Positions 10,167-54,465 of a DNA stretch of 64,000 nucleotides are shown one piece after another. A program made the translations under genes and the position numbers. Under the pieces are notes generated by a model. The model saw nothing but the letters and a program-made list of their open reading frames with translations. It was not told where the DNA came from and did not search any database. Within the stretch, counting starts at the first letter, position 1. The number at the start of each line of letters is the position of its first letter. Location of the stretch: the IMG/VR virus record IMGVR_UViG_3300023278_002893, positions 233,726 through 297,725 of that record, one strand, 5' to 3'.

Positions 10167-10195
10167 ATTATAAGTTCTGCCGCGCGTAATGTCAA
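10167..10195 (-). promoter_or_regulatory. sigma70 consensus promoter
   Basis: Minus-strand TTGACA (10195-10190), 17 nt, TATAAT (10172-10167). Confidence 0.9.
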
Positions 10196-10203
10196 TGTAA
10201 CCC

Positions 10204-10601: not shown

Positions 10602-10858
10602 TCCCCGCCTTGGCTGTTCGGTCTCTTGAAACTAACGAAGTCGCGGATCTCAACTTTGTACCACACCCTACCTTTCGTCGAGAGGTGAGGGGCGCTCGGT
10701 TCGCGACCAGCGTGCCAACCGGGACGGTGCGCAAAGCCTTTTGTTGGAATGTCCTCAGCGGGGAGCCACACCCCGATCGGGATCCGTTGTCGTGTTCCGA
10801 TGAACAGAGGCCCGATGGTACCGTCCTTGCGTTGTTTAAACAATTTGTAAGCTTTCAT
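10550..10858 (-). CDS. hypothetical protein, phage-type
   Basis: GAGGAG RBS before ATG 10858; MKAYKLF...GFAHRPGWH...RPNSQGGEWLIA. Confidence 0.75.
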   Translation of the reverse strand: MKAYKLFKQRKDGTIGPLFIGTRQRIPIGVWLPAEDIPTKGFAHRPGWHAGREPSAPHLSTKGRVWYKVEIRDFVSFKRPNSQGGEWLIAQNMKVLGPLRSS

Positions 10859-10975
10859 CTTTCTCCTCAAACCAATAATACGAGAAGTGTTCCCCCGTGT
10901 CAAGCACTATCTTCCCCTTTTCACTCGGGGTGGTTTATGATCTATATAGTGGCAAAGAAAGTGATTCCAACGAGA

Positions 10976-11004
10976 ATAATAAGAGAGAATAGAGAGGATG
11001 TCAA
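10976..11004 (-). promoter_or_regulatory. sigma70 promoter at the strand switch
   Basis: Minus-strand TTGACA (11004-10999), 17 nt, TATTAT (10981-10976). Confidence 0.75.
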
Positions 11005-11085
11005 ATAAATGACTAGGAGGTCAATATACATCTTCCCCCTTGAGATATAATGGGAGATAATATTGCCTTAGGGACCCTAGCATAG

Positions 11086-11106
11086 TTACCTCACCTTGTG
11101 AGGTAA
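11086..11106. promoter_or_regulatory. 21-bp palindromic box TTACCTCAC-CTT-GTGAGGTAA
   Basis: Perfect 9-bp arms; near copies at 11180-11200 and 12490-12510. Confidence 0.8.
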
Positions 11107-11364
11107 TCATTGTTTATACCCCCCTCCTCCGTCGAGGGATATACACATTGATTAACTATGCTACACGCGCTACCACTTGTTACCTCACTGCGTGAGCTAA
11201 TAATTCTCGCTTCGCTCGAATTAGACATGTCGTCTACTTCCAGCAAGCTGAAAGGAGACACCATGTCACGACACGGAGGTCGCAAGCTCCCTCGTCACTG
11301 AGCTTGTCTAACGCAGCACTCATGCTGCACCGCACGGAGAGCTACGCTCTACCGTGCAGGAGGT

Positions 11365-11559
11365 ATGACTATGTCATCCCCCACGCTCGTGCTCCGTGTT
11401 CCGACCTGCGACGCTGTCGATTGCATCGACCCCAGCGCAGGGTGCTACCCCGCACTCGATGTCTTCGAAGATATCGAGCTGTGCGTACATCACGAGAGTG
11501 AGTACGCCACTGCGGGTCGCATCAATGAGAGCGATCGACTCGTCGATCACTCTTCCTGA
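11365..11559 (+). CDS. small Cys/His acidic protein (array module)
   Basis: AGGAGGT RBS; followed by hairpin 11566-11588. Confidence 0.7.
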   Translation: MTMSSPTLVLRVPTCDAVDCIDPSAGCYPALDVFEDIELCVHHESEYATAGRINESDRLVDHSS

Positions 11560-11670
11560 TGCTTGGGGACCCCCCTCTGGGGGGTCCCTGTGGTTACCTC
11601 TCCGAGGTACCCTTCTATCCCTCGCTTCGCTCGGGTACCCCATCACCACGTGGATCTCGCTGCGCGAGCC

Positions 11671-11723
11671 CTAGTTGCATCACTTCGTGATACAATCATT
11701 TCTCGCTTATCACTCGAAAGGAG
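11671..11723 (+). promoter_or_regulatory. promoter/RBS module, copy 1 (box + extended -10 TGaTACAAT + GAAAGGAG)
   Basis: Near-identical to 12174-12225. Confidence 0.8.
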
Positions 11724-11729
11724 TATGAC

Positions 11730-11903
11730 ATGCCCAGTCTCGTCTTCGACTTTGACTGTTCCTGTGAGGTCCTCCCTTCGGGGGACCTCTGGTGCTGCGA
11801 TGTGTGCAGCACCGAAGCTGACCCTTGGGGTCAGCTTGCTACCGAAGAATCCGATCGGATTCTCGGACACAACACCTTCCTCGATATCTCTCGAAAGGAG
11901 TAG
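11730..11903 (+). CDS. 57-aa Cys-rich micro-protein
   Basis: AAAGGAG RBS; MPSLVFDFDCSCEVLPSGDLWCCDVCSTE...; below the ORF-track cutoff. Confidence 0.65.
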   Translation: MPSLVFDFDCSCEVLPSGDLWCCDVCSTEADPWGQLATEESDRILGHNTFLDISRKE

Positions 11904-11906
11904 ATC

Positions 11907-12029
11907 ATGCTCGAACAATTCGCTATCGCTCTTGTCCCCACCATCGCGTTGCTCTTGGTGGGTCGCTTGATCTGGATCACCGATCCAGAGGTCAAGCGAC
12001 TGCGCAAAGCTGAGCAGAAGCTCAGCTAG
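11907..12029 (+). CDS. 40-aa single-TM peptide
   Basis: AAAGGAG RBS; MLEQFAIALVPTIALLLVGRLIWITDPEVKRLRKAEQKLS. Confidence 0.7.
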   Translation: MLEQFAIALVPTIALLLVGRLIWITDPEVKRLRKAEQKLS

Positions 12030-12035
12030 CGCATC

Positions 12036-12064
12036 GGACCCCCCTAACGGGGGGTCCTCTTTTT
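12036..12064 (+). terminator. intrinsic terminator
   Basis: GGACCCCCC-TAAC-GGGGGGTCC followed by TCTTTTT. Confidence 0.85.
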
Positions 12065-12173
12065 ACAGCACCGACCCGCTTCGCTAAGTCGGTCTTGTTC
12101 ATTTACTCGTGAGTACCCCCTTCGGGGGTACCAACGAGCACCGCTCGTTCCTCGCTCTCGTCGTTCCTCCTCA

Positions 12174-12225
12174 CTAGTTGCATCACTTTGTGATACAATC
12201 ATTTCTCGCTATCGCTCGAAAGGAG
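12174..12225 (+). promoter_or_regulatory. promoter/RBS module, copy 2
   Basis: ctagttgcatcactttgtgatacaatcatttctcgctatcgctcgaaaggag. Confidence 0.8.
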
Positions 12226-12229
12226 ATCC

Positions 12230-12460
12230 ATGTTTATCATTCTTCTCGATTCCTCGAAGAACGAACTCCGCGTCGTCCGTGCTGACTCTGTCAGCGACTC
12301 CGGGACGCGGGTCGTTGTGGTTCCTCACCACAACGGTCACTCGTACGACTTCGAACTCCCTCCGGGAGTCGAAGCCTTCGCAGACCTCGCTACCTTCGAC
12401 GATGTCGAAGCTGCGTGGTCGTCGGTTCGCACCGACTTCTGCCCCTCGCTCCACCCCTAG
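12230..12460 (+). CDS. hypothetical protein (array module)
   Basis: RBS from the module; C-ending codons. Confidence 0.75.
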   Translation: MFIILLDSSKNELRVVRADSVSDSGTRVVVVPHHNGHSYDFELPPGVEAFADLATFDDVEAAWSSVRTDFCPSLHP

Positions 12461-12579
12461 CGGGGTGGGGTGTCCCCCTTCGGGGGTAGTTACCTCACTC
12501 TGTGAGGTAATACTTCTCTGGGTACTAGCGTACCCTTTGAAGTATTATCTTTCTCGTTAATCTCTCGAAAGGAGACTCT

Positions 12580-13059
12580 ATGCGTTGCTCGTTCTGTAAC
12601 GATCCCCGTGGGATCATCATGGTTGATGGTATCCCCGAGCCCTGCTGTGATGAGATCATCACGCAGCAAGTCCGCGAAGTACGCGGCATCTGTGTCAATT
12701 GTGGGGAATCCCACACTCGCATGAACGAGGGTGTAGACACCCTCTCCGCCATGTGCTCCGATGAGTGCCTCACCGAAGCCATGGATCGCATCGAAGCAAT
12801 CGCGCTGCGCGACGATTGTGGCGGTGAGATGCCCGACCAGGAGGTCATGGACCTCCATGACTCCGTCGATCGTATCGACGCAGCCAACCTCGCGTGGTAC
12901 CGCCACGCGGGTCAGTACATCGACAACGGTGTCGATGACTGTCTCGGTACTCCTCCCTTCTGGTTGGAGTACTCGATAGAGCGCGACGCTCTGGAGAGCG
13001 ATGCACGCATCGCTAAGCTCCAGAACGACGAGCACAAGTACGGGTGTATCCCGTTCTAG
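12580..13059 (+). CDS. acidic Cys-rich protein ending in IPF
   Basis: GAAAGGAG RBS; CxxC/CC/CxxC/CxxxC; followed by hairpin 13066-13085. Confidence 0.8.
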   Translation: MRCSFCNDPRGIIMVDGIPEPCCDEIITQQVREVRGICVNCGESHTRMNEGVDTLSAMCSDECLTEAMDRIEAIALRDDCGGEMPDQEVMDLHDSVDRIDAANLAWYRHAGQYIDNGVDDCLGTPPFWLEYSIERDALESDARIAKLQNDEHKYGCIPF

Positions 13060-13144
13060 TGCTCTGGTCCCCCTAGCGGGGGACCTACCGCTCCGCTCTC
13101 GCTTCGCTCACTAGTTCCTCCACTTCGTGAAGGAGGTCACTCAC

Positions 13145-13219
13145 ATGACCAAGTTGATCCTGTGCACCTACGCTCCGCTGCTCTACTTGCTTGCGGAATT
13201 CGCTTCACTCATCCCTTAA
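13145..13219 (+). CDS. 24-aa hydrophobic peptide
   Basis: AAGGAGGT RBS; MTKLILCTYAPLLYLLAEFASLIP. Confidence 0.55.
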   Translation: MTKLILCTYAPLLYLLAEFASLIP

Positions 13220-13237
13220 CCAAGAAGGAGCTACGCT

Positions 13238-13291
13238 ATGGATGATCTCGACCGCGACATCCAGGACGTCATTGACGACCTGTGCGAATAG
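13238..13291 (+). CDS. 17-aa acidic peptide
   Basis: GAAGGAG RBS; MDDLDRDIQDVIDDLCE; followed by a 15-bp hairpin. Confidence 0.5.
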   Translation: MDDLDRDIQDVIDDLCE

Positions 13292-13799
13292 ACCCATGTG
13301 GGTAGGAGTGCGTTACCGCGCACTCCTGCCCACCCGCTTCGCTCGCTACGCTCGCTCGCTCCTCTAAGAGCAAGGGAGGACTCTGTTGAGTCCTACTCCA
13401 GTACCGCTCGTCCCTCGCTCTCGCTTCGCTCACTCCCCTTCGGGGATAGTCCCATCACTTCGTGATCGGTAGTACATTTTTTTCGCTCATCGCTCAAAAA
13501 GGAGTCCTCCATTGGATGGATGACACCCCACAGCTACCTGCCCGAGCACGGCTTGGTAGCACCACGGGGGCCGTAGTGCTCCCTCCGCTGCGAGACGCAG
13601 TACAAGCAGTGACCTGCTTGTGGCGGAGGTTGATCAGCTCGCTTCGCTCGCTAACGGATGCTCCGCATCCTTAGAGACCCGGAGCGTCCCCCCTACGGGG
13701 GGTAGTTTCACCGCTGCGCGATGAAGTATCGGTTCTTGCGAACCTCGTTGTTAGACCACAGTGGTCTGATGCAGGGTTCGCTTGATAGGAGGACATGAC

Positions 13800-14156
13800 A
13801 TGTCCAATGCAGTAAAGACCACGATCAAGAAGTTTTCGTTCACGAAGTGGATCAGTGAGATCGAAGGTTCGGGTGCTCGCGTACTCGGATTCTGTGAGAT
13901 GACGGTCTGCGTCGATGGTCTGGAGTTCACGTTCAGTGACCTGAAGGTTCGCGTGAATCAGAAGGGTGAGCATCACCTGTGCGCACCGAGTCGTCGCTAC
14001 AAGAACTCCGAAGGTGCCTGGAGGACGTCGAGCGCGTACAAGTTCGACAATTCGACGTATGCTGCTCTGCGCAGTTTCGTCTACGGTCGCGACGAAGTGA
14101 AGGTCGCGATCGACGAAGCCGCGGATCTCGAAAAGGAGATTCCGCTGAGCGCGTAG
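13800..14156 (+). CDS. SpoVG-like nucleic-acid-binding protein #1
   Basis: AGGAGG RBS; VLGFCEMTV...FSDLKV...HHLCAPSRRYKNSEGAWR resembles the SpoVG pattern DIRVI...LFVAMPSK...GEFRD. Confidence 0.7.
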   Translation: MSNAVKTTIKKFSFTKWISEIEGSGARVLGFCEMTVCVDGLEFTFSDLKVRVNQKGEHHLCAPSRRYKNSEGAWRTSSAYKFDNSTYAALRSFVYGRDEVKVAIDEAADLEKEIPLSA

Positions 14157-44853: not shown

Positions 44854-45561
44854 GTGGAAAAATGCAGACCTATTATTTTCTTGATCTTATTAGGATCGTC
44901 TTTGTTTGCGCTCTATTCGAACAGAAGACAGCCTGAGATTATACCCCCATCCCTCATCGAAGAACCAAAACTCCGGTGGTCAGAGCTATCCTTTGAATAC
45001 CGGTTCGTGGTAATGAGTGAGCTTCGTGCAAACCACTTAGTGAAGATCTGCCATGCAGATCCTGAACTAGCATCCCGTATAGTAGCTGCGGTGGAAGAGG
45101 GCGCCGAACTATACAGCTTGGATATCGATCTCGTTCTGGGTCTTATCCTGGTGGAATCTCACTGCTCTCCCGAAGCCGTGAGTTTTATGGGAGCACTGGG
45201 GCTGATGCAGGTCATGCCCGCAACTGGGAAGTTCATCTCACACTCGTTGGGATTCAAATGGTCAGGTGATGGGGTTCTTCGGGCGATAGAAAGCAACATC
45301 GCTTATGGAACTTGGTATCTACATTACTTACGGACACGCTTTCCGAAAAACGAACATGCTGTTATCGCCTCCTATAATTGGGGGCCGGAACACATACAAG
45401 GAAGGATAAATCGATCCGAGCCTCTTCCCCAAGTTTATCCGGGGAAAGTGTATGAAGCCACAGAAAAACTCCGTCAATATATCTGGAGCGACGAATACAA
45501 TAAGATATATTGGCAAGGTGTGGATAAATACATCGAGAACGCTCGAAGAGAGGGAAGATAA
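44854..45561 (+). CDS. membrane-anchored SLT lytic transglycosylase
   Basis: LILVES (catalytic Glu), GALGLMQVMPATG, NIAYGTWYL, ASYNWGP; N-terminal TM. Confidence 0.9.
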   Translation: MEKCRPIIFLILLGSSLFALYSNRRQPEIIPPSLIEEPKLRWSELSFEYRFVVMSELRANHLVKICHADPELASRIVAAVEEGAELYSLDIDLVLGLILVESHCSPEAVSFMGALGLMQVMPATGKFISHSLGFKWSGDGVLRAIESNIAYGTWYLHYLRTRFPKNEHAVIASYNWGPEHIQGRINRSEPLPQVYPGKVYEATEKLRQYIWSDEYNKIYWQGVDKYIENARREGR

Positions 45562-45565
45562 TAAT

Positions 45566-46450
45566 ATGTTGGTAGCATTTTTTGGAGATACACATGGCAA
45601 TCTAAATATCATGTACGCCATGTCTTTGGCCTGGGAAAAAAGGACAGGCTTCGAGATAGATTTGATTGTACAAGTTGGAGACTTCGGATTCTGGCTCTCA
45701 GAAAATACTGTAGATAAGATGACCGCCAAGCACCGGAAAAGAAATAACGACCGAAGAACACAGGTAGGTGAAGAACAAAGAGCCATTTGCGGGGACTACC
45801 CCGAATACGTGCTGGGAGAACTTACTGCACCCAAGAAAACCCTGGTCATTCGTGGCAACCACGAAGATCAAGGATACCTGATGCTGAGAGAAAGGAAACA
45901 TCAGAAAGAGAATCCCGATGATTACATGAACCGGGCGATTGAAATGGTTCCCAACATCTACTATCTACCTGATGGGCATGTGGTTGATATAGAGGGTGTG
46001 AAATTCGGAGGCCTGGGAGGAAACTTCTCCTATAAGACCTTCCACACTTGGAACTACTGGGACGAACACCGAACGCTTCGTTCAAAGCGGCACGGGGGTG
46101 AGCAACGTCGCCTGAACCATTTTACACGAGATCGTTGGGAAATGCTGTCTCGTAGAAAGATGGATGTCCTGCTCCTCCATGATGCTCCCAGTGGTATCGG
46201 AGTTGTAGGTGCTTCGTCCTTGAAGGGTAAGATGCCTGAGGACGAGATGACCAGCCTTATATACGGGTCGTGTGGTAGCCCTCAGCTACTAGAGCTGATC
46301 GAAGCAATAGCCCCCAAGCATGTCTATTGCGGACATTGGCATCAGTTTCGAAAAGCGAAGTTCGGAGAAACTCACACCACTGTGTTGAATCTAACAGGTA
46401 ACCCTCCCACAGAAGATTGTATGGAGGTAATAGAACTATGCCCCGAGTAG
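45566..46450 (+). CDS. calcineurin-like metallophosphoesterase
   Basis: GDTHG, VGDFG, RGNHE, LLHDAP, YCGHWH. Confidence 0.9.
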   Translation: MLVAFFGDTHGNLNIMYAMSLAWEKRTGFEIDLIVQVGDFGFWLSENTVDKMTAKHRKRNNDRRTQVGEEQRAICGDYPEYVLGELTAPKKTLVIRGNHEDQGYLMLRERKHQKENPDDYMNRAIEMVPNIYYLPDGHVVDIEGVKFGGLGGNFSYKTFHTWNYWDEHRTLRSKRHGGEQRRLNHFTRDRWEMLSRRKMDVLLLHDAPSGIGVVGASSLKGKMPEDEMTSLIYGSCGSPQLLELIEAIAPKHVYCGHWHQFRKAKFGETHTTVLNLTGNPPTEDCMEVIELCPE

Positions 46451-47196
46451 ATTTGGGAGACGTCTTCGACTTCCCCACCATTTCCGATACCGAACTCGCG
46501 GCAGGTTTGTTGGATCCCATCGGCCTTCCGGAAATAAATCTTACGGAAGAAGATACAGTAAATCTGGACATCCCACTTTTAGAGTTGAGTGAGGATGAGT
46601 GGATAACTGAACTAGATGATGCGTTCCAAGATATATTTATCCCAACCACCGTGATAACCAGAGGGGTTGGATACTGCGAGAATGATAAGTGCTCTGATTA
46701 TGGTAAGGGTAGCTTCTTGTTCATGCATGAGGGTAACACTTTCACCTGTGTTACCTGTAATAAAACAAGCGACCATGTGTTATCGGAAAGAGGTATCCCG
46801 GAAAGGGAAGGTAACATCCCTTTTGCTACTGTTCGTATAGAATACGCATACGCGCCTGCTCGCCGTGAATACACAGAGATAGCTGTGCTCACCGACGAGG
46901 GATATAATGGACCGAGTGGTACTTATACAGTCCAAAATCCTTTATGTAAGACTTCCGAGCGCGCGTTCAAAATTGCCGAAACTCACCTATCCATAATAAA
47001 CCAAACGGGAGCATTCAGCGACGATGATTTGTCCGAAGTTCCGAAGTGTCATGAGATCCTCCTCAGTTTCGATAAACCGATCGTTGAACTAAGGAAAGAT
47101 CTGGAAAGACTAGAACGAAGATTAAGTAGTACACCTTTCCTCCAGAAAGAATTAGTAGTTTCAGATTTCATTGAAGTGGAATCTGACCCAAAATAA
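46438..47196 (+). CDS. Zn-binding protein, paralog of 33968..34633, with acidic N-terminus
   Basis: VGYCENDKC...KGSFL...CVTC...ERG; KTSERAFKIAE; LLSFD. Confidence 0.75.
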   Translation: MPRVDLGDVFDFPTISDTELAAGLLDPIGLPEINLTEEDTVNLDIPLLELSEDEWITELDDAFQDIFIPTTVITRGVGYCENDKCSDYGKGSFLFMHEGNTFTCVTCNKTSDHVLSERGIPEREGNIPFATVRIEYAYAPARREYTEIAVLTDEGYNGPSGTYTVQNPLCKTSERAFKIAETHLSIINQTGAFSDDDLSEVPKCHEILLSFDKPIVELRKDLERLERRLSSTPFLQKELVVSDFIEVESDPK

Positions 47197-47211
47197 GAAG
47201 AGGAGAAGCAC

Positions 47212-47613
47212 GTGGATCAAAATCGAGTAGTGCTGGCAGGACGATTGACGCGCGCGGCGGAGTTTCACCCCCCAGGACAAGTAGGACAAGCCCACTGCAC
47301 ATTCACACTTGCTATCAATAGAGTGGTAGTAGATAAGGGTGGTCCAAAAGCAGATTTCATTCCCTGTTCTTTGTGGGGTGACGCTGCCCAGAAATTCGTT
47401 GAGGAGCGTGCGAAGGGCGATTCGGTTGGTGTAATAGGAAGACTTAGGGCCAATTCCGTACTACAACCTGATGGGAAAAATCGCTGCTTCTTCGAAATCA
47501 GAGTAGAGGAATTTTCGAGTGGGTGCAAGTCCTTGAAGAATCTCCAGCCCGCCCCAAAGGCGACTACCGCAACTAAAGCAGTAAGTTTGCTTCAGAAAGA
47601 ATTCACCCCATGA
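47212..47613 (+). CDS. ssb: single-stranded DNA-binding protein (third OB-fold gene)
   Basis: NRVVLAGRLTR...FTLAINR...ADFIPCSLWG...KGDSVGVIGRL; basic tail. Confidence 0.85.
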   Translation: MDQNRVVLAGRLTRAAEFHPPGQVGQAHCTFTLAINRVVVDKGGPKADFIPCSLWGDAAQKFVEERAKGDSVGVIGRLRANSVLQPDGKNRCFFEIRVEEFSSGCKSLKNLQPAPKATTATKAVSLLQKEFTP

Positions 47614-48545
47614 GCAATAAATCTCAGTCGAAATCTGAACGCACGGAGGCGATTTCGCCCGAAGATCTTCTAGACGCCGCTTTTACAGAGGCCGATCTGA
47701 GAGAACTACACAGCATCAAACACGAGTTAGGTACCTGTGTGAGGTGGGGTACTCTGGTTGCACAAATTTTTACTTCCCTGCGAATTGGAGTAGATACTCT
47801 GGTTTTTCTGGAACATCCAGGTCAAAACCCGGCTGCAGTAAAAGTGAATCCCTATGAATCTTTATTTCCAATTGATCAGGAAAAGATCAACGGCCCCTCG
47901 AAGAAATCCAAGATGTGTAGAGAGTATGTACTGCTACATATAATAAAGAAGCTCCTCGGGGCACTGAAGACACACGTAAATCAAAAATTGGCTGAGTTCG
48001 ATGTAGTTGATGCGGAGACTGAAGGGCAACTTCGAGATCTCCTCGCCGAGAGCTACATCGCCAATGCCTACGACAGTGCTGATGAAGAGGAGATGGATCT
48101 CGTGGCCAGTACCGACGGCGAAATACCCATACCCAGTGAAGAATGCGTACACGACGACAGCAGTTTTCACGGAGTATCTGCCGAAGAGTCCGAATCGGGT
48201 AAAGACGAACTTCACAGGTTTTGTAGAACCTGCAACACTTGGCTTAGCAGACAGGTCTTGAAGAATAGGCTCAGTGATCAGTCTCGCTTCCGACAGAAAC
48301 GGAGAAAGCGGGAGTGTAGTCATCAAGGTGAGTGGGTAGAAGGTGGGGAGGGAAAAACAGCAATCTGCTCCAACTGCAAGGAGACAATCTCGAACCCTAG
48401 CGAATATAGTTGGGTGAAGGCGGGGTTGGAACCCTTTGGAGACGATCCTGATCAAGATGAGATTATGGAAATCCCGGTCGGACAATCGAGACGGGAGATC
48501 TCAGCAACAGTTAGAGCTAACGCTGCAACGAAGGAGTCGGTGTGA
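47610..48545 (+). CDS. hypothetical protein with C-terminal Cys/His motifs
   Basis: ATGA overlaps; CVH...FCRTC; CSH...CSNC. Confidence 0.7.
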   Translation: MSNKSQSKSERTEAISPEDLLDAAFTEADLRELHSIKHELGTCVRWGTLVAQIFTSLRIGVDTLVFLEHPGQNPAAVKVNPYESLFPIDQEKINGPSKKSKMCREYVLLHIIKKLLGALKTHVNQKLAEFDVVDAETEGQLRDLLAESYIANAYDSADEEEMDLVASTDGEIPIPSEECVHDDSSFHGVSAEESESGKDELHRFCRTCNTWLSRQVLKNRLSDQSRFRQKRRKRECSHQGEWVEGGEGKTAICSNCKETISNPSEYSWVKAGLEPFGDDPDQDEIMEIPVGQSRREISATVRANAATKESV

Positions 48546-48976
48546 GGGTACTAATCGTAGAGGATAACGTTGCGCTGATCCCTGAATATCTGAGAATCTT
48601 CAAGGAAATACTAGGAGATGGCGATACTTATACTCACGTTGCGTCCGTCCACGACGCCATCGAGTCGCTTTTCGAAGAAAATTGGGATGTCATCTTAGTC
48701 GATACTGATCTTGGAGTCGCTGGAAAATTCAAGAGTGGAATTGAGGGAGGGGACGAGTTAACTCTGAGGAATGGTTATGATTTGGTCAGATTCAGACGTC
48801 GGGTAGAACAATTGGAATCAGACCGCATCGTTCCTGCCAAGATTATTGGGTTAGCACCCAATCGGTCAGCTTTGCCTGCTTTTGACACAGTTGGAACCAA
48901 CCATCGACTCTTCAAGTTGGATATCCCTGGAATTGCCAAACAGATCCGCGCATACTCCGACGAAGTACAGGCCTAG
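48542..48976 (+). CDS. CheY-like receiver domain protein
   Basis: MRVLIVEDN...DVILVDTDL...NGYDLVR...AKIIGL. Confidence 0.75.
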   Translation: MRVLIVEDNVALIPEYLRIFKEILGDGDTYTHVASVHDAIESLFEENWDVILVDTDLGVAGKFKSGIEGGDELTLRNGYDLVRFRRRVEQLESDRIVPAKIIGLAPNRSALPAFDTVGTNHRLFKLDIPGIAKQIRAYSDEVQA

Positions 48977-48986
48977 GGAGAAGACC

Positions 48987-49271
48987 GTGAATGACGTGAT
49001 TGAGACTACAGGTATAGTCGTGGATGTCCTGGGTAGCAACAATTACCGGGTGGAAGTAGGTCCCGACGATGCTAGTAAGAGAACGATTCTCTGTTACCTG
49101 GGTGGCCGGATGCGCAGATATCGAATCAATATTCTTCCCGGTGATGAAGTAACAATCACGACATCCCCTCCGTTTGAACGAGGAAGGATCACCTACCGCG
49201 GAAAGAAGTTGGATCGGACAGAAAAGTCCGGGAAGCGTCCCAAGGGACGTGGTGCCCGGAGGAGAAGGTAA
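48987..49271 (+). CDS. infA: translation initiation factor IF-1
   Basis: DVIETTGIVVDVL...ILCYLGGRMRRYRINILPGDEV...RGRITYR; GTG start after GGGAG. Confidence 0.9.
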   Translation: MNDVIETTGIVVDVLGSNNYRVEVGPDDASKRTILCYLGGRMRRYRINILPGDEVTITTSPPFERGRITYRGKKLDRTEKSGKRPKGRGARRRR

Positions 49272-49282: not shown

Positions 49283-49367
49283 GGGGAAGTGGTGAAATTG
49301 GCAGACACGCGGGATTCAAGATGCCGTGCCTTCGGGCGTGAGGGTTCGACTCCCTCCTTCCCCACCA
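49283..49367 (+). tRNA. tRNA-Leu(CAA)
   Basis: GGGGAAG/CTTCCCC; TTCAAGA loop; variable arm GCC-TTCG-GGC; CCA; one G.G mismatch in the anticodon stem. Confidence 0.9.
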
Positions 49368-49607
49368 AGCAAAGGAGAAGACATGACAGTTGAAGAAATG
49401 CGAGAGAAAACAGTGGGCCTGAAGTCCGCCGACCGGCTCGCCGGGGCAGCTGATCTTTGGAATGTAACTGCCGAGATCTGTGAGAGATTGGAAGCCATTC
49501 AGAAACGCCTGGATGAACCCATGAACGTATATACGAAATCCGATCCGGGGATAACAGAGTAGAGGATTTTTTTTTGGGTAATCATTTACCCAGGAGAAAG
49601 AAAAGAA

Positions 49608-50033
49608 ATGCCGAAAGTATTCGTGTACGGAACCCTTCGTAAGGGTGATTGTCGAAACCGCATGCTCGTCGAGGCGACCTGCGTTGCCGCCGAAGCCTAT
49701 CTCGACGGATTTGATCTGCTCGACATGGGATCCTTTCCAGGAATCGTTCCCACCGAGTCCGCATCTGTCACTCGCGTGAGGGGGGAAGTCTATGATGTCT
49801 CCGACGATCTGCTCGCCGATCTCGATGTAGTGGAGGGTTTCCAGGAAGATCGACCAGATGATTCTTTGTACCTTCGACAAGAAGTGACTGTCAAGATCTT
49901 CGGCAGTGAGGATATCGAAGTCCTTACCTACATTTACAATGAAAGAAGATATCGACGACACGATCGTCACAACATCATCGAGTCGGGTGACTGGTTCGAT
50001 ACCAAAGCACAGCCGCCACCGCCCAACTTCTAG
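49608..50033 (+). CDS. gamma-glutamylcyclotransferase (AIG2-like)
   Basis: VFVYGTLRKG...FPGIV...VRGEVY...LDVVEG...LYLR. Confidence 0.9.
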   Translation: MPKVFVYGTLRKGDCRNRMLVEATCVAAEAYLDGFDLLDMGSFPGIVPTESASVTRVRGEVYDVSDDLLADLDVVEGFQEDRPDDSLYLRQEVTVKIFGSEDIEVLTYIYNERRYRRHDRHNIIESGDWFDTKAQPPPPNF

Positions 50034-50148
50034 AGGTAGATTTTATATACGAGGGCACCGTCGCGTTCGGGCTACCAGACTACGGGGGATCGTCTCACGT
50101 TAGAGTCTGGAAATACTTAGACCGTTAGTTGAAGGAGTAGTTTCCATT

Positions 50149-50952
50149 ATGGGTGCCAAAGTAAAGGACGAAACACCAAAGACCAAGTTCGGTGGTGATT
50201 ACAAGACAGCTCAGATCTACAGCATGGGGTATGAGTTCGCATTCATGTCTCAGAAGCGAAAGGGTGCGGTCTATGAACAGGCCACCCCCATGGTGTATTG
50301 CAAGGACTTCCTCCACGACGCTCTCTGGGCTTTCATCAACCAGACGAATTGGCAGATCCACAGCTTCAAGTACAACTACGGGAAGAACCCGCCCTTGATG
50401 CTCGACCATACCGCGCTCGCCTTCCAGAACACCCAGTTCAAGGGTAATGAAGACGAGTTCCATGGGAAGATGGACGCGTGTTTGGAATTCCTTCGTCTCT
50501 GTGAGCGTCAGTTGAACCTGCGCCCCTCGGAGATCCACCAGGTCGAAAACAAGAACGGTCCGTGTTGGTTGGTGCTTGGTGACGCGGGATGGCAGCATTC
50601 CCCCACCATGATTTCCCTCTACACGCTCTTCATCCGACTAGGCTGCTTCCACACGCCAGGAGCTAAGCTCGAAGATACGTTGAAGTTGGCAAAGTCAGGG
50701 AAGATCAAGATCGGTCAGTCCGGCTATGCAGGCAACAACGACGGGAGCTACGTCAAGCAGGGTTGGAAGGGGATCGAATTGATCTTGAAGCACGGGATGG
50801 GTATCTGGCATCCTAAGCAGGCGGACAACTACCCAATGTCTCTCAGGGATGCCGGGCTTCATGACAACTACGGGATCGTCAACTTCACCGCCAAACGTCC
50901 CCTGGAAACGATGCCACACTGGTACCGTAAGGAAATCTGGGGCAAAAAGTAA
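50149..50952 (+). CDS. unknown protein of the ligase cluster, paralog A
   Basis: Shares FAxxSxKxKG, C(K/R)D and GDxxWQxxPxxxSxYxLxIR with 53382..54284. Confidence 0.75.
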   Translation: MGAKVKDETPKTKFGGDYKTAQIYSMGYEFAFMSQKRKGAVYEQATPMVYCKDFLHDALWAFINQTNWQIHSFKYNYGKNPPLMLDHTALAFQNTQFKGNEDEFHGKMDACLEFLRLCERQLNLRPSEIHQVENKNGPCWLVLGDAGWQHSPTMISLYTLFIRLGCFHTPGAKLEDTLKLAKSGKIKIGQSGYAGNNDGSYVKQGWKGIELILKHGMGIWHPKQADNYPMSLRDAGLHDNYGIVNFTAKRPLETMPHWYRKEIWGKK

Positions 50953-50962
50953 GGAGAGATCG

Positions 50963-51859
50963 ATGGAAGGGTGTTTCGTCGCCGGGGCCGACCCCGAGCT
51001 GATGCTGGTAGATGCGCAGGGAGTTCTAGTTAGTGCCATTGGGATCGTCCCGGGAACCAAAGAAGATCCCCATCCCCTGACTTGTGGGGCGGTACAACAT
51101 GACAATGTCCTGGGCGAGTTCAATGTCAATCCTTCGGAAACCAGTGAAGAACTGGTACACAATTTTCGGGAAGTCCTACGGGAACTCTCGGAGATGATAG
51201 CTCCTCTGTCTTTGGTGGCCAGAGCCAGTGCCGAATACCCAAAGTCTGCATTGGAAGATGACGTGGCTAAGATCTTCGGATGCGATCCAGACTTCAATGC
51301 CTGGACCATGATGAGGAACTCCGTCGACGGCACTGCTGCCATGAAGAGATTCCGATCTGCCGGAGGTCACTTCCATGTGGGAATGGCCGACTCGACCAGG
51401 GAGATGCTCGCCGATCCTTACGGAAAAGTCGAGGTCGTGAAGATGATGGATATCTTCATGGGTATTCCCAGTGTCCTTATCGACGACGACCCGACCGCCC
51501 CTGCTCGAAGGAAGCTCTATGGAGGAGCGGGCGCCCACCGACCCAAGGACTACGGAGTGGAATACCGAGCCTTGGGCAACTTCTGGGTCAGATCGCCCGA
51601 TCTCGTGGAGCTGATGTACGAGCTAGCCAATGTAGCGGTGTCTCTGACTCTGGACGGAAAAAGCAGCGAGATTATCGAGGCAGTGAGTGAAGAAACCGCT
51701 CAGCAGGTAATCAACAAATCCGATCGCTCCGTGGCGGGAAAGATCGTTGAGAATCATCTGAAGAAATGGATCGATTCCACGATCTACCAATGTCTCGTCT
51801 CTAAGTCACCAATCGCTAACATAAAGGGACTAACCTTGAAAGAGGCCTGGGGAATCTAG
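50963..51859 (+). CDS. phiEco32-like COOH-NH2 ligase type 2 (glutamine-synthetase-like fold)
   Basis: GADPELM, QHDNVLGEFNV, FGCDPDFNAW, RSAGGHFHVG, YGGAGAHRPKDYGVEYRALGNFW. Confidence 0.9.
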   Translation: MEGCFVAGADPELMLVDAQGVLVSAIGIVPGTKEDPHPLTCGAVQHDNVLGEFNVNPSETSEELVHNFREVLRELSEMIAPLSLVARASAEYPKSALEDDVAKIFGCDPDFNAWTMMRNSVDGTAAMKRFRSAGGHFHVGMADSTREMLADPYGKVEVVKMMDIFMGIPSVLIDDDPTAPARRKLYGGAGAHRPKDYGVEYRALGNFWVRSPDLVELMYELANVAVSLTLDGKSSEIIEAVSEETAQQVINKSDRSVAGKIVENHLKKWIDSTIYQCLVSKSPIANIKGLTLKEAWGI

Positions 51860-52761
51860 TGCAACGTTTGTTACCGGGGAATAAAAAGGCTCGTCGCGGA
51901 TGGGATGTCGAGATTCCAGACCACCTTTCCTGCGAGATAGGCGACCACGTCGTATATCGCGCAGTTAATCGCCTCGGCGGTGAGCACACGTTCTCAGATA
52001 AAGAAACCGCTCCCGTCAGCACAAGAGTTTGTTACGCCGAGTGTCGGCCGAAATACAACAACTACGATATCGAATGTATGCCCCACAATATGAAGAAGAG
52101 AGGTGTTATCACAATCGACGATGTGATTACCTTCTTCAATTACTTCGATGCTCTGGAAATGCTTCCAGAAGGGATTGAAATGTGGGAGAAAGCTCCCGGA
52201 TCAGGAACTCACATCCTCATCAAGGCTGACTCGAAGACCAATCCCCACTACTATTACGTCGCCCTGACTTTGTATCGGTGGGTGGATTCCCATCCCGTAC
52301 TGGTTTGGAAATTCTTGAGACTTATGGAATCCAATCCCGAACTCCACCCCATGCAGGTGCTACCCCATCTGATCGAGAAGTATATCAACAATAGTAATCA
52401 CAGCTTCATCGAAGTAGGGCTAGCATATACAGCCGCTATCAATCCTCTATCGGGACTGTCGGCCAAATTATACTTCGATTCGTCCTCTAAGTTTGGTAAG
52501 AAAGCGCTGGCCGAACCAACGAAGTATGTCCTCGATGGCATCAAAGAGATATGTGAGAAGATAACTCCCATGATCAAGCTCAAGGTACCTGTGAGTAAAC
52601 ATCCCTGGTCTCCTACTTACACCACAGAACCGCTATACGTGTTAGAACAGGGTGTAGATTGTCTAAGCCCTGTACTGACCGAGTTGTACAATCTCACCAA
52701 CCCAAACAAGAAAACAATCGTGGAGTTTCTAGAAGAAAACTTCACCAAGGAGCGAAGGTAA
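51859..52761 (+). CDS. unknown protein of the ligase cluster
   Basis: TAGTG coupling to the ligase gene; 300 aa. Confidence 0.7.
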   Translation: MQRLLPGNKKARRGWDVEIPDHLSCEIGDHVVYRAVNRLGGEHTFSDKETAPVSTRVCYAECRPKYNNYDIECMPHNMKKRGVITIDDVITFFNYFDALEMLPEGIEMWEKAPGSGTHILIKADSKTNPHYYYVALTLYRWVDSHPVLVWKFLRLMESNPELHPMQVLPHLIEKYINNSNHSFIEVGLAYTAAINPLSGLSAKLYFDSSSKFGKKALAEPTKYVLDGIKEICEKITPMIKLKVPVSKHPWSPTYTTEPLYVLEQGVDCLSPVLTELYNLTNPNKKTIVEFLEENFTKERR

Positions 52762-52764
52762 GCA

Positions 52765-53469
52765 ATGCTGATTTACGTCGAGGATGATTACGATGGACAA
52801 TACGGAACTTTTTGGTCGGAACTCGGCGAAATCATTCGCGATCCCGCGATCTTCAAGGCCCGCCCTCAAGACTTCGGACTAGTCTGCTTCACGGGTGGTT
52901 CCGATGTGAGCCCCGAACTGTATGACCACCAGAATCTGGGCAGTCACAACAGCCTCTCCCGCGACAAGACGGAGATGCGAGTCTACGAGCTGGCGTTGGA
53001 ACATGGAATCCCCATGACCGGCATCTGCCGGGGCAGCCAGTTCCTGAATGTCCAGATGGGCGGAACCATGGTTCAGGATCTAGGCGCGAGCCACGGTGGT
53101 AGCCCGCACCTCGCACTGACCATCCAAGCCGACGATGACGTCCGGGACATGCAGGTTACCAGTTCTCATCATCAGATGAGTGTGTTGGGTGAAGGAGGAA
53201 TCCTGCTGGCCCACTCCGAGATCTCGATCCCTTGGGACGCTTGTGCGTACGACGGAGAATTCCCGGCTGGAGCAGAGTGCCTGCTCGACGAACGCGGTGA
53301 CGATCCGGAGAAGCGCATCTACATGACCGAAGCCTTCGCCTATCCCGAAGCCAGGATCTTTGCCGTCCAGCATCATCCCGAATGGCAGGATGTCAGTTGC
53401 AAAGCGGCTCAATGGACTCTTCGCAAGATTCGCGAGATTTGTCTGGGAGAAAAAGAAGCAGCGGTTTGA
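52765..53469 (+). CDS. class-I glutamine amidotransferase / peptidase C26-like
   Basis: FTGGSDVSP, GICRGSQFLNV (nucleophile Cys), SHHQ, AVQHHPE. Confidence 0.9.
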   Translation: MLIYVEDDYDGQYGTFWSELGEIIRDPAIFKARPQDFGLVCFTGGSDVSPELYDHQNLGSHNSLSRDKTEMRVYELALEHGIPMTGICRGSQFLNVQMGGTMVQDLGASHGGSPHLALTIQADDDVRDMQVTSSHHQMSVLGEGGILLAHSEISIPWDACAYDGEFPAGAECLLDERGDDPEKRIYMTEAFAYPEARIFAVQHHPEWQDVSCKAAQWTLRKIREICLGEKEAAV

Positions 53470-54284
53470 AGACCGTAATAATTCGTTGGTTCCAGCGAAT
53501 AGGTAAAAGACCCAGAACGAAGAGGTGCTACGTGACAGAAGAGACAGAAGTAGATTGGAACGCCGACGGGATTAACGAGTGCGATAGTTATTTCGAGGGG
53601 CCTGTGTTTGCTTGGCTATCCCCCAAGTCGAAAGGTAAGTTGAAACAGGCTCACCAATGGACAAGGTGCCGCGACATCGTCGGGTCGTATTTTTCAGGAG
53701 CCCTAAGAAGCACTTCCACAGAGTATGGGGGCATCGCGTGGAAAAAGAATTACCCGCTGCCCTCTTTTGATCAGACCGTTGTGGGAGTCAAGTTGAACTC
53801 CCAAGACAGCAAGACTTTGACTTACGACTCCAATAACATGGAGACGATCGTCTGGGCAATCGAAGATAAGCTCGGTCTCAAAAGGACTGAACTGATCCCG
53901 ATGGAGAACCCCCAGACCTATCCTGAGGGATGCCAACTCTGGGCATTTGTCGGGGACCCGTTCTGGCAGAAAGCACCTCCACTGCTCAGCATGTACCTTC
54001 TGCTAATCAGAACCACCCCATACCTCGATCCCGACGTCGGCAGCCTGACGAAGATCATCGGACAGAATCTCAGGGAGCGGAATGCTGGCGAAGATTGTCT
54101 CGCCGCTGCTAAGACCACCATCATGCGCATCGTTAAGGAAGGAACGGAAGTCTGGACTGGTGAGCAAGAAGAATACTACACAGGTAGGAAGTTCCAATAC
54201 CTCGGCTTGAAGTACTTCACCGCCCTAAGTCCGCGAGAAAGGAAACACTTCCTAGCCCACGGAAAGCCAGACACGATACTGTAA
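53382..54284 (+). CDS. unknown protein of the ligase cluster, paralog B (true start probably downstream, about 53466-53532)
   Basis: Homology to 50149..50952. Confidence 0.7.
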   Translation: MAGCQLQSGSMDSSQDSRDLSGRKRSSGLKTVIIRWFQRIGKRPRTKRCYVTEETEVDWNADGINECDSYFEGPVFAWLSPKSKGKLKQAHQWTRCRDIVGSYFSGALRSTSTEYGGIAWKKNYPLPSFDQTVVGVKLNSQDSKTLTYDSNNMETIVWAIEDKLGLKRTELIPMENPQTYPEGCQLWAFVGDPFWQKAPPLLSMYLLLIRTTPYLDPDVGSLTKIIGQNLRERNAGEDCLAAAKTTIMRIVKEGTEVWTGEQEEYYTGRKFQYLGLKYFTALSPRERKHFLAHGKPDTIL

Positions 54285-54289: not shown

Positions 54290-54318
54290 TTGACATTCGA
54301 GGCCTAATAACGTATCAT
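54290..54318 (+). promoter_or_regulatory. sigma70 promoter heading the tRNA region
   Basis: TTGACA, 17 nt, TATCAT. Confidence 0.8.
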
Positions 54319-54388: not shown

Positions 54389-54465
54389 GCCCCCTTCGTC
54401 TAATTGGATAAGGCCCTGGTTTTCTAAACCAGTTATTGCAGGTTCGAGTCCTGCAGGGGGTGCCA
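54389..54465 (+). tRNA. tRNA-Arg(TCT)
   Basis: CTGGT-TTTCTAA-ACCAG; GGTTCGAGTCC; CCA. Confidence 0.95.

What the first reader, a model, noticed from the sequence alone, without database searches (positions are those of the whole stretch)
49608..54284. Peptide-ligase cluster (GGCT, COOH-NH2 ligase, GATase) with three large unknown genes, two of them paralogs
Seen: six contiguous co-directional genes. ORFs 50149 and 53382 align (FAFMSQKRKG/FAWLSPKSKG; CKD/CRD; ERQLNLRPSEI/EDKLGLKRTEL; WLVLGDAGWQHSPTMISLYTLFIR/WAFVGDPFWQKAPPLLSMYLLLIR). Established: phiEco32-like phages carry ligase/GGCT/amidotransferase clusters predicted to make or modify gamma-glutamyl peptides, with the product unknown. No ATP-grasp or amidoligase gene is recognisable here. 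Inference: the unknown proteins are new components (substrates, scaffolds or divergent ligases) of an uncharacterised modification pathway.
Basis: partly seen in the sequence, partly recalled or inferred. Interest (0 to 1): 0.75.

Follow-up and report, generated by a model that had tools for sequence, protein, structure and literature searches.

The report
Jumbo-phage ligase operon with ligase-like partners
A giant phage carries a six-gene operon in which a peptide-bond-forming ligase and two enzymes that cut gamma-glutamyl bonds travel with three unannotated proteins; these three fall into two phage-only families that look like stripped-down copies of the ligase fold and almost always sit next to that ligase in other phages, but what the operon makes or modifies is still unknown.

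Summary
Window 49608-54284 is a tight six-gene plus-strand operon: GGACT cyclotransferase, unknown g2, PF14395 COOH-NH2 ligase, unknown g4, Peptidase_C26/class-I GATase, unknown g6. Genes g2 and g6 are true paralogs (BLASTP E 1e-11).

In 35 non-identical phage loci, a g2-family ("P1") gene lies immediately upstream of the ligase. g4-family ("P2") genes recur in the window's clade and in larger arrays. In two phages, two P1 domains are fused into one protein next to the ligase.

Best reading: a jumbo-phage variant of the known but biochemically untested phiEco32/LUZ24 amidoligase cassette. P1 and P2 would be ligase-fold-derived obligate partners of a gamma-glutamyl "write/erase" module. Substrate and mechanism remain inferred. 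A new variant of a known kind, of moderate interest.

The parts
49608..50033 (+). g1: gamma-glutamyl(amine) cyclotransferase, AIG2/GGACT-like, 141 aa. YGTL motif at residues 7-10; candidate catalytic Glu76 in the VVEGF motif.
   Evidence: Pfam PF06094 E 6.8e-26; phrog_2520 E 4.2e-23; motif positions.
50149..50952 (+). g2: 'P1' family protein, 267 aa, Pfam-less. Predicted to be a reduced GS/PafA/Dop-like fold. Conserved G27-x-E29, C51-K52-D53, W148-x-x-S-P152 and R163.
50963..51859 (+). g3: phiEco32-type COOH-NH2 (carboxylate-amine) ligase, 298 aa. Family-invariant residues are intact: G8/D10/E12, D47/E52, H136/H138, E200/R202, W208/P212.
   Evidence: Pfam PF14395 E 2.9e-14; phrog_3815 E 2.8e-71. 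655 homologs, all PF14395, typically 292-304 aa. Invariant columns; motif positions.
51859..52761 (+). g4: 'P2' family protein, 300 aa, Pfam-less. The GTG start overlaps the g3 stop by 1 nt. Family-invariant residues: C58, R140 (in the YRW-DS-P motif) and H181.
52765..53469 (+). g5: class-I glutamine-amidotransferase-fold enzyme of the Peptidase_C26 (gamma-glutamyl hydrolase/PuuD-like) type, 234 aa. Cys88 (GICRG) and His204-Pro-Glu206 triad are present.
   Evidence: Pfam PF07722 E 8.1e-21 and PF00117 E 4.3e-7. phrog_7218 E 1.1e-29. Best NCBIfam hits, all below cut-off, are gamma-glutamyl-GABA hydrolase at 1.3e-8 and gamma-glutamyl-CDP-amidate hydrolase at 4.3e-6. Motifs.
53532..54284 (+). g6: second, more degenerate P1-family paralog ('P1 prime'), about 250 aa from GTG 53532. 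The open frame reaches back to 53382 inside g5. It keeps the invariant Cys (CRD), Trp and Arg but has lost E29, K52 and H238 equivalents.
   Evidence: BLASTP to g2 E 1e-11. P1 HMM E 6e-50. Start and RBS read. Alignment. The same position after the GATase is occupied by a P1 paralog in L010, a 295.8-kb contig.

Best explanation
The six genes form one operon of a roughly 298-kb jumbo phage. It is a variant of the phage amidoligase cassette known from phiEco32/LUZ24-type phages.

Shown:
- The operon has one ATP-dependent carboxylate-amine ligase of the glutamine-synthetase fold (g3, the 'writer').
- It has two enzymes whose families cleave gamma-glutamyl amide bonds: the g5 C26 hydrolase type and the g1 GGACT cyclotransferase (the 'erasers' or trimmers).
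- It has three proteins from two phage-restricted, unannotated families: P1 (g2 and g6) and P2 (g4).
- These families are genomically locked to the ligase.

Inferred from predicted structure:
- P1 and P2 are pared-down derivatives of the same GS/PafA/Dop carboxylate-amine-ligase fold.
- They have lost the ligase's metal- and ATP-binding residues.
- Each keeps an invariant Cys just before a helix, plus an invariant Arg. P2 also keeps an invariant His.

Inferred mechanism:
- The ligase activates a carboxylate, most likely a glutamate gamma-carboxyl, and joins it to an amine on a host or phage target.
- P1 acts as a P1/P1' pair, with P2 where it is present. Together they are the ligase's obligate partners. 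They either present or hold the acceptor as pseudo-ligase specificity subunits, or they use their conserved Cys to transfer or trim the ligated group.
- The C26 enzyme and GGACT remove or recycle the gamma-glutamyl moiety. In another jumbo-phage clade an alpha/beta hydrolase stands in their place.

The target is not determined. It could be a peptidoglycan precursor, a protein or a small amine.
For: Operon structure and enzyme identities. Catalytic motifs of g1, g3 and g5 are intact.

Co-occurrence:
- P1 lies directly upstream of a PF14395 ligase in 48 loci, 35 non-identical. Of 33 IMG/VR P1 loci, 27 show it; the 6 exceptions are weak, partial P1-like hits.
- The third gene varies. It is C26 GATase plus GGACT in the window's clade. 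It is an Abhydrolase_2/DLH hydrolase in 23 of the 35 non-identical loci.

Evidence for P1 pairing:
- Tandem P1-P1 fusion proteins of 528-531 aa lie directly upstream of the ligase in L057 and L061.
- Two or three separate P1 genes occur in L007 and L097.
- P1 plus P1' occur in the window and in L010.

Fold:
- AF2 models are confident: pLDDT 93.4 and 92.8.
- P2's top two hits are Dop and PafA, followed by three glutamate-cysteine-ligase-type enzymes.
- The ligase and P1 share a W-x-x-S-P-x-[LM]-[VI]-x-L motif at equivalent positions after the last core strand.

Phage restriction: no P1 relative was found in 185,579 cellular genomes.

Literature: the cassette is described but untested (PMC5498523, PMC3890496, PMC11318856, citing Iyer et al. 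2009, PMID 20023723). A GS-fold ligase and a GS-fold hydrolase working as a homologous pair has a precedent in PafA/Dop (PMC7947786).
Against: - Foldseek finds nothing in the PDB.
- Profile-profile comparisons among P1, P2 and the ligase are not significant.
- P1 and P2 lack the ligase's E/D, H-x-H and E-x-R motifs, so they are probably not ATP-dependent ligases themselves.
- A predicted ligase-P1 complex gave no verdict, which counts neither for nor against.
- One AlphaFold-DB look-alike of P1 (TM 0.62) carries an automatic 'LAGLIDADG' name.
- A distant P2 relative sits near a GGACT gene but has no ligase within 6 kb.
- Many loci come from related jumbo phages, so the locus counts overstate independence.
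- No experiment anywhere defines the substrate of this cassette.
Confidence: 0.5

Rival explanations
1. Literature hypothesis: the cassette remodels peptidoglycan stem peptides or their cytoplasmic precursors, for example to block superinfection. P1 and P2 would be extra, unrecognised enzymes of that route.
For: Published annotation of the homologous cassette as a 'peptidoglycan modification cassette' (PMC5498523; PMC11318856, citing Iyer 2009). The stem peptide contains a gamma-glutamyl amide bond (general knowledge). An SLT lytic transglycosylase gene lies 4 kb upstream in the window and in L001 and L002.
Against: The hypothesis has never been tested. All six proteins look cytoplasmic. GGACT and C26 families are known for L-gamma-glutamyl amines, not D-iso-Glu linkages (general knowledge). 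The jumbo-phage variant lacks the ATP-grasp and Amidoligase_2 genes on which the three-linkage argument was built. The SLT gene is separated from the operon by unrelated genes.
Confidence: 0.2
2. A small-molecule pathway that uses transient gamma-glutamylation, as in polyamine (Puu) catabolism or the gamma-glutamyl protecting group of butirosin synthesis. The ligase would gamma-glutamylate an amine, P1 and P2 would process the protected intermediate, and C26 or GGACT would deprotect it.
For: A GS-fold ligase, a C26 hydrolase and a GGCT-like enzyme is exactly the enzyme set of such routes (general knowledge: PuuA/PuuD; BtrJ/BtrG). The best NCBIfam hits of g5 are gamma-glutamyl-GABA hydrolase and gamma-glutamyl-CDP-amidate hydrolase. 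Structural neighbours of P1 include the small-molecule enzymes gamma-glutamylmethylamide synthetase and 1-naphthylamine GS.
Against: No oxidoreductase, aminotransferase or other typical processing enzyme is present in the operon. P1 and P2 have a ligase-like fold, not a processing-enzyme fold. In the other jumbo-phage clade the eraser is a generic alpha/beta hydrolase.
Confidence: 0.2
3. The three unknowns are unrelated accessory genes, or substrates, that merely sit in a variable region. The fold resemblance to GS/PafA is a chance 'common arrangement'.
Against: Strict head-to-tail adjacency of P1 to the ligase holds across 28-100% identity and across different cassette architectures. Fused P1-P1 genes and tight or overlapping gene junctions add to this. 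GS-superfamily enzymes monopolise the top ranks in three independent structure searches of two different models.
Confidence: 0.08

Closest known systems
phiEco32 / LUZ24 / Kuravirus / crAss-like phage amidoligase cassette (Iyer et al. 2009; also called a 'peptidoglycan modification cassette')
   Same: It has the same PF14395 COOH-NH2 ligase (32-40% identity to cultured-phage copies), a GGCT/GGACT gene and an amidotransferase-fold gene. Two unannotated proteins of about 300 aa sit directly upstream of the ligase: LUZ24 gp14/gp15, SU10 gp090/gp089, and the cr108_1 329/300-aa pair, which are paralogs of each other. One such upstream family from small phages shows a weak profile match to P2 (E 3.7e-4).
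   Different: The window's cassette, and the whole genome, lacks Amidoligase_2 (PF12224) and the RimK-type ATP-grasp. Its amidotransferase is class-I/C26, not the class-II GlmS-like enzyme. Gene order differs. P1 is not detectable by sequence in the cultured phages. The function of the canonical cassette is itself untested.
PafA / Dop (pupylation ligase and depupylase, GS-fold homologs)
   Same: These are the best structural matches of both P1 and P2 models. They give a precedent for a GS-fold ligase working beside GS-fold homologs that do not ligate. The chemistry is a gamma-glutamyl-amine isopeptide, the bond type that GGACT-family enzymes cleave (general knowledge).
   Different: There is no sequence similarity. 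P1 and P2 are about half the size and lack the GxExE, Asp and Arg active-site residues. There is no conserved Pup-like small protein: the only candidate ORF, 49383-49562, has no homolog in related loci. There are no proteasome genes.
Gamma-glutamylation pathways with a GS-like ligase plus C26 hydrolase (E. coli PuuA/PuuD) or a GGCT-like deprotection enzyme (butirosin BtrJ/BtrG)
   Same: A carboxylate-amine ligase is combined with a Peptidase_C26-type gamma-glutamyl hydrolase and a cyclotransferase. The nearest curated model to g5 is PuuD.
   Different: The ligase belongs to a different family (PF14395, about 300 aa). There are no oxidase or dehydrogenase steps. The setting is a phage, and three ligase-fold accessory proteins are present that those pathways lack. 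The comparison rests on general knowledge, not on a test made here.

Membership tests
phiEco32-type phage amidoligase cassette | PF14395 COOH-NH2 ligase present and catalytically intact | tested here: met
   Pfam E 2.9e-14, PHROG E 2.8e-71. All family-invariant residues are present.
phiEco32-type phage amidoligase cassette | GGCT/GGACT gene and an amidotransferase-fold gene in the same gene block | tested here: met
   g1 is PF06094. g5 is PF07722/PF00117. However, g5 is class I/C26, whereas LUZ24 and SU10 carry a class-II enzyme.
phiEco32-type phage amidoligase cassette | Second ligase of the Amidoligase_2 family (PF12224) | tested here: not met
   No match in the whole 297.7-kb genome.
phiEco32-type phage amidoligase cassette | RimK-type ATP-grasp ligase | tested here: not met
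   No PF08443 match in the genome. Other ATP-grasp families were not searched.
Glutamine-synthetase / GCL / PafA-Dop carboxylate-amine ligase superfamily (for P1 and P2) | Shared fold: curved antiparallel sheet with flanking helices | tested here: inconclusive
Glutamine-synthetase / GCL / PafA-Dop carboxylate-amine ligase superfamily (for P1 and P2) | Detectable sequence or profile homology to a member family | tested here: not met
   hhalign of P1 or P2 against the PF14395 alignment gives E 0.3-0.4. No Pfam hits appear even at E 10. There are no PDB sequence hits to the superfamily.
Glutamine-synthetase / GCL / PafA-Dop carboxylate-amine ligase superfamily (for P1 and P2) | Conserved metal- and ATP-binding acidic, His and Arg residues | tested here: not met
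   P1 keeps only G27-x-E29 at the first strand and lacks equivalents of the ligase's D47/E52, H136/H138 and E200/R202. P2's invariants are C58, R140 and H181. The register was not verified in 3D.
Pupylation-like protein tagging system | Small conserved tag protein with C-terminal Gln/Glu encoded with the ligase | tested here: not met
   The only candidate is a 59-aa ORF ending in Glu at 49383-49562. It has no homolog in any related locus.
LAGLIDADG homing endonuclease fold (considered for P1) | Structural match to solved LAGLIDADG enzymes | tested here: not met
   The only lead is an automatic name on one AFDB look-alike. No LAGLIDADG chain appears in the top 50 of either VIA search. No Pfam LAGLIDADG hit was found in 89 members.

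The most novel reading that the evidence does not exclude
P1 and P2 are a new class of cysteine-dependent enzymes built on a minimised glutamine-synthetase/PafA-Dop scaffold. Together with the PF14395 ligase they would form a phage-encoded conjugation system that attaches a gamma-glutamyl-linked group to host or phage proteins or other macromolecules, and edits it. This would be a pupylation-like 'writer/adaptor/eraser' machine of jumbo phages. It would also explain the two orphan ORFs next to the ligase in phiEco32, LUZ24 and crAss-like phages.
Probability: 0.12. Interest if true: 0.85.

Novelty: new variant of a known kind. Interest (0 to 1): 0.55.

Why it matters
The phiEco32-type amidoligase cassette has been annotated in hundreds of phages since 2009, including therapeutic Pseudomonas and E. 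coli phages (319 records). Its product and target have never been determined.

This work shows that the ligase has obligate, previously unnamed partners:
- There are two phage-only families.
- They probably derive from the ligase fold.
- They often occur as pairs or fusions.

This changes what must be co-expressed to reconstitute the activity, and it gives concrete residues to mutate (invariant Cys and Arg). The work also defines a minimal three-gene module in jumbo phages (P1, ligase, hydrolase) that should be easier to study than the seven-gene canonical cassette.

Tried and rejected
- Megablast of the operon, and tblastn of g2 and g4, against 50,697 phage records: nothing for the operon or g4, and one weak hit for g2.
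- The word-indexed protein search for g4 found only itself. The exhaustive profile search later found 153 relatives.
- Foldseek against the PDB, AFDB clusters, BFVD and the ESM Atlas, plus Atlas feature searches, gave no usable named match for either model. The exceptions were family members and sub-threshold hints: an 'Amidoligase enzyme' at E 0.14, and a 300-aa cr108_1 protein at E 0.06.
- hhalign among P1, P2 and the ligase was not significant.
- hhalign and jackhmmer of LUZ24 gp14/15/17, SU10 gp087/089/090 and the cr108_1 pair against P1, P2 and the ligase gave only weak, consistent-region hits to P2 (E 0.06-0.11) and no bridging.
- Complex prediction of ligase plus P1 gave no verdict (score 0.03). 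It is not evidence either way.
- The LAGLIDADG idea was rejected.
- The Pup-like small ORF idea was rejected.
- A DNA-hypermodification role (aGPT-Pplase-like) was considered from memory. No Pfam support was found and no kinase or hmU genes are in the operon, so it was dropped.
- A weak PDB profile hit of the 3-sequence P2 alignment to lytic transglycosylases (E 0.0014) did not recur with structure searches and was dropped.
- The Iyer 2009 paper could not be read. Its content is cited only through papers that quote it.


Full report
**1. What is in the sequence**

The window is the last 64 kb of a 297,725-bp virus record that CheckV rates complete. It is a jumbo phage with 15 tRNA genes in the window alone and no close relative among 50,697 deposited phage genomes.

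Between tRNA-Leu (49283-49367) and tRNA-Arg (54389-54465) lie six plus-strand genes.

| Gene | Coordinates | Identity | Evidence |
|---|---|---|---|
| g1 | 49608-50033 | GGACT/AIG2-like cyclotransferase | Pfam E 6.8e-26 |
| g2 | 50149-50952 | unknown | no family match |
| g3 | 50963-51859 | PF14395 COOH-NH2 ligase | Pfam E 2.9e-14; PHROG 3815 E 2.8e-71 |
| g4 | 51859-52761 | unknown | no family match |
| g5 | 52765-53469 | Peptidase_C26 / class-I GATase | Pfam E 8.1e-21 and 4.3e-7 |
| g6 | 53532-54284 | unknown | no family match |

- g3 begins at ATG 50963. Its homologs are 292-304 aa and align from there.
- g6 most likely begins at GTG 53532, behind an AAGAGG ribosome-binding site.

With these starts the gene gaps are 115, 10, -1, 3 and 62 nt, so this is a tight operon.

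The recognisable enzymes keep their catalytic signatures:
- g1 has YGTL and Glu76.
- g3 has every family-invariant acidic, His and Arg residue.
- g5 has Cys88 and His204-Pro-Glu206.

The nearest curated models to g5 are gamma-glutamyl-GABA hydrolase (PuuD) and gamma-glutamyl-CDP-amidate hydrolase, both below cut-off.

**2. The paralogy**

g2 and g6 align over 238 residues at 26% identity, E 1e-11. Both are hit by one family model, at 2e-127 and 6e-50.
- g6 is the more degenerate copy. It keeps the Cys, Trp and Arg that are invariant across the whole family, but it loses several residues that are nearly invariant in g2-type members.
- g4 shows no sequence relation to g2 or g6.

I call the g2/g6 family P1 and the g4 family P2.

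**3. Are the unknowns real genes, and how widespread are they?**

P1 has 87 relatives in the 5.8-billion-protein collection. All come from metagenomes or MAG contigs, and none has a Pfam domain or an informative name.

P2 seemed an orphan in the word-indexed search. Syntenic genes in relatives were clearly homologous, and an exhaustive profile search found 153 relatives.

Neither family matches Pfam (also tested member by member), PHROGs, NCBIfam or PADLOC. A scan of one genome from each of 185,579 prokaryotic species found no P1 relative. Within the reach of that pattern scan, the family looks phage-restricted.

**4.

I took contexts for five P1 homologs spanning 34-71% identity. I scanned IMG/VR with the P1 alignment and the ligase alignment. 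I then searched all loci with HMMs for P1, P2, the ligase, GGACT and GATase.

- *P1 next to the ligase.* P1 lies head-to-tail immediately upstream of a PF14395 ligase in 48 loci, 35 of them non-identical. Of the 33 IMG/VR P1 loci, 27 show this. The six that do not are weak, partial P1-like hits (E 1e-16 to 1e-19).
- *Three recurring architectures.*
  - (a) The window's clade has GGACT-P1-ligase-(P2)-C26 GATase. A second P1 follows the GATase in the window and in L010, a 295.8-kb contig at about 55% identity.
  - (b) A larger clade of jumbo phages has P1-ligase-alpha/beta hydrolase. The hydrolase (Abhydrolase_2/esterase/DLH) is present in 23 of the 35 loci.
  - (c) Expanded arrays occur in L057, L061 and L097. 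They have two or three P1 copies, P2 in L057 and L061, the ligase, two GATases and GGACT.
- *Fusions.* In L057 and L061 the gene directly upstream of the ligase encodes two P1 domains fused in tandem (528-531 aa). In L007 and L097 two separate P1 genes precede the ligase. This fusion evidence argues that P1 works as a pair.
- *P2.* P2 is found between ligase and GATase in the window's clade (L001, L002, L010, L124) and in arrays (c). A distant relative (L125) sits 1 kb from a GGACT gene but has no ligase within 6 kb. P2's linkage is therefore looser.

Many of these loci are related phages, so the counts are not independent events. Adjacency that persists down to about 28% identity and across different cassette architectures is nonetheless not hitch-hiking.

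**5. Relation to the known cassette**

The ligase matches 319 deposited phages at 27-41% identity. These include LUZ24-like Pseudomonas phages, Kuravirus/phiEco32-like coliphages, Vibrio and Aeromonas phages and a crAss-like phage.

Their cassette is ligase, Amidoligase_2, class-II GATase, RimK-type ATP-grasp and GGCT (PMC3890496). The literature calls it a peptidoglycan-modification or superinfection-exclusion cassette. That label follows computational predictions (PMC5498523; PMC11318856, citing Iyer 2009). I found no experimental test.

In LUZ24, SU10 and cr108_1, two 'hypothetical proteins' of 300-400 aa sit just upstream of the ligase. In cr108_1 a small amidotransferase gene lies between the pair and the ligase. 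None has a Pfam family. In cr108_1 the two are paralogs of each other (E 1e-62).

Sequence bridges from these proteins to P1 and P2 are weak:
- A 305-aa family directly upstream of the ligase in 21 small-phage loci matches P2 at hhalign E 3.7e-4 over 141 columns.
- SU10 gp090, the cr108_1 300-aa protein and LUZ24 gp14 give E 0.06-0.11 against overlapping parts of P2.
- The second-best BFVD structural hit of the P1 model is a 300-aa cr108_1 protein (E 0.06).

I treat the equivalence of these orphans with P1 and P2 as a lead, not a result.

The window's genome has no Amidoligase_2 and no RimK-type ATP-grasp. The operon is therefore a reduced variant with one recognisable ligase.

**6. What P1 and P2 look like**

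AlphaFold2 models built on family alignments are confident: P1 has pLDDT 93.4 and pTM 0.92, and P2 has pLDDT 92.8 and pTM 0.91.

Foldseek finds no solved structure for either. In AFDB it finds only P1's own family, plus one look-alike with an automatic LAGLIDADG name.

- *P2.* The top two hits are Dop (4.5) and PafA (3.7), followed by three glutamate-cysteine-ligase-type enzymes and a GS.

At sequence level the only trace is a shared W-x-x-S-P-x-[LM]-[VI]-x-L motif. It follows the last core strand in the ligase (208-217) and in P1 (148-157), with a one-residue-shifted version in P2.

P1 and P2 are about 80 residues shorter between the first strand and this motif. They lack the ligase's D47/E52, H136/H138 and E200/R202 equivalents. 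What they conserve is different:
- P1 conserves G27-x-E29, C51-K52-D53, D57, R163, H168, D198, N-Y-P 227-229 and H238. C51, W148 and R163 are invariant even in the degenerate paralogs.
- P2 has invariant C58, R140 and H181.

In both models the invariant Cys sits just before a helix. That is a common setting for a nucleophilic Cys, but this reading is an inference.

**7. Mechanism: what is shown and what is inferred**

Shown:
- This is an operon combining a carboxylate-amine ligase with two enzymes from families that cleave gamma-glutamyl amides.
- Two unannotated families are genomically locked to the ligase.
- P1 recurs in pairs or as fusions.
- The hydrolytic partner is replaceable. It is C26 plus GGACT in one clade and an alpha/beta hydrolase in another.

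Inferred, moderate confidence: P1 and P2 derive from the GS/PafA/Dop fold and are not ATP-dependent ligases themselves.

Inferred, low confidence:
- The ligase forms a gamma-glutamyl-type amide on a target.
- P1/P1' and P2 act either as acceptor-presenting pseudo-ligase subunits or as Cys-dependent transfer or trimming enzymes. PafA/Dop gives the precedent of a GS-fold ligase and a GS-fold hydrolase working as a pair (PMC7947786).
- C26 and GGACT remove or recycle the gamma-glutamyl group.

The target is open: a peptidoglycan precursor, a protein or a small amine. A predicted ligase-P1 complex gave no verdict.

**8. Other readings considered**

- The peptidoglycan hypothesis and a Puu/butirosin-like transient gamma-glutamylation pathway both remain possible. 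They are listed as rivals.
- A pupylation-like tag is not supported. The only small ORF ending in Glu (49383-49562) has no homolog in related loci.
- 'Unrelated neighbours' is contradicted by the co-occurrence data.

**9. Verdict**

The operon is a jumbo-phage variant of a known but functionally unsolved phage cassette.

What is new is that its three 'unknown' genes belong to two phage-only families. These are obligate ligase neighbours, probable ligase-fold derivatives, and likely the counterparts of long-ignored orphan ORFs in cultured phages.

Interest is moderate. The finding sharpens an old open question and makes it more testable, but it does not answer it.

Noticed in passing
Same genome, outside the window: G000:C1 about 33.6-41.3 kb (locus L134:5117-15958): There is a second amidoligase cluster. 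Its order is: helicase, PF14395 ligase (370 aa), unknown 566 aa, class-II GATase (274 aa), class-II GATase (556 aa, a paralog), PF14395 ligase (422 aa), then unknowns of 374, 156 and 402 aa. The two ligases are about 26% identical to g3 and to each other. No P1 or P2 gene is there. The phage therefore carries three PF14395 ligases in two clusters.
   Followed up: partly
window 49383-49562 (+): A 59-aa ORF with a good AAGGAG ribosome-binding site lies between tRNA-Leu and g1, and it ends in ...GITE. It was checked as a possible Pup-like tag. It has no homolog in any related locus, so it is probably strain-specific or non-coding.
   Followed up: yes
window 41048-63466: Fifteen tRNA genes are interspersed with small ORFs. 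The operon is bracketed by tRNA-Leu(CAA) at 49283-49367 and tRNA-Arg(TCT) at 54389-54465. An 11/12 sigma-70-like promoter match at 54290-54318 lies just after g6 and ahead of the tRNA-Arg.
   Followed up: no
window 44854-49271: Upstream neighbours are an SLT lytic transglycosylase (44854-45561), a Metallophos phosphoesterase (45452-46450), SSB (47212-47613) and an IF-1/eIF-1A-like protein (48882-49271). SLT and the IF-1-like gene are syntenic in L001 and L002; Metallophos recurs in L001 only. In relatives, a SpoU-type methylase usually follows the GATase, where this phage has g6.
   Followed up: partly
L057:5415-6998 and L061:5391-6983: Single ORFs of 528-531 aa encode two tandem P1 domains directly upstream of the ligase. 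L097 has three separate P1 genes. These arrays also carry two GATase genes flanking GGACT.
   Followed up: partly
L127 (LUZ24 gp14, gp15, gp17), L128 (SU10 gp090, gp089, gp087), L129 (cr108_1 4448-6349): Cultured and reference phages have two unannotated proteins of 300-400 aa just upstream of the PF14395 ligase, and in LUZ24 and SU10 a protein of about 190-205 aa immediately downstream. None has a Pfam family. The two cr108_1 proteins are paralogs (E 1e-62).
   Followed up: partly
L125:4240-6870: A distant P2-family gene lies 1 kb downstream of a 264-aa GGACT-domain gene and near a Gad2 (anti-Gabija) gene, with no ligase within 6 kb. Acb5 (anti-CBASS) genes lie 4-5 kb downstream of the cassette in L001-L004. 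The cassette tends to sit in regions rich in counter-defence genes.
   Followed up: no
window 1-14000: The first 10 kb or so is lower in GC (0.43-0.46) with negative GC skew, and its large ORFs lie on the minus strand. These include UDG at 4476-5084, a DeoC-like aldolase at 1255-1998 and an Ig-domain protein at 6641-8407. A GC peak of 0.57 occurs at 12-14 kb, before the plus-strand block begins.
   Followed up: no
L134:26-2899: A 957-aa ORF has weak hits to both RNA_pol_Rpb2_6 and RNA_pol_Rpb1_2. This suggests a jumbo-phage multisubunit RNA-polymerase-like protein with beta and beta-prime pieces in one chain.
   Followed up: no
method note: The word-indexed homolog search returned only the query for g4, although clear homologs at 31-44% identity exist in syntenic loci. 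The exhaustive profile search found 153 relatives. 'No homologs' from the indexed search should not be read as orphan status.
   Followed up: yes
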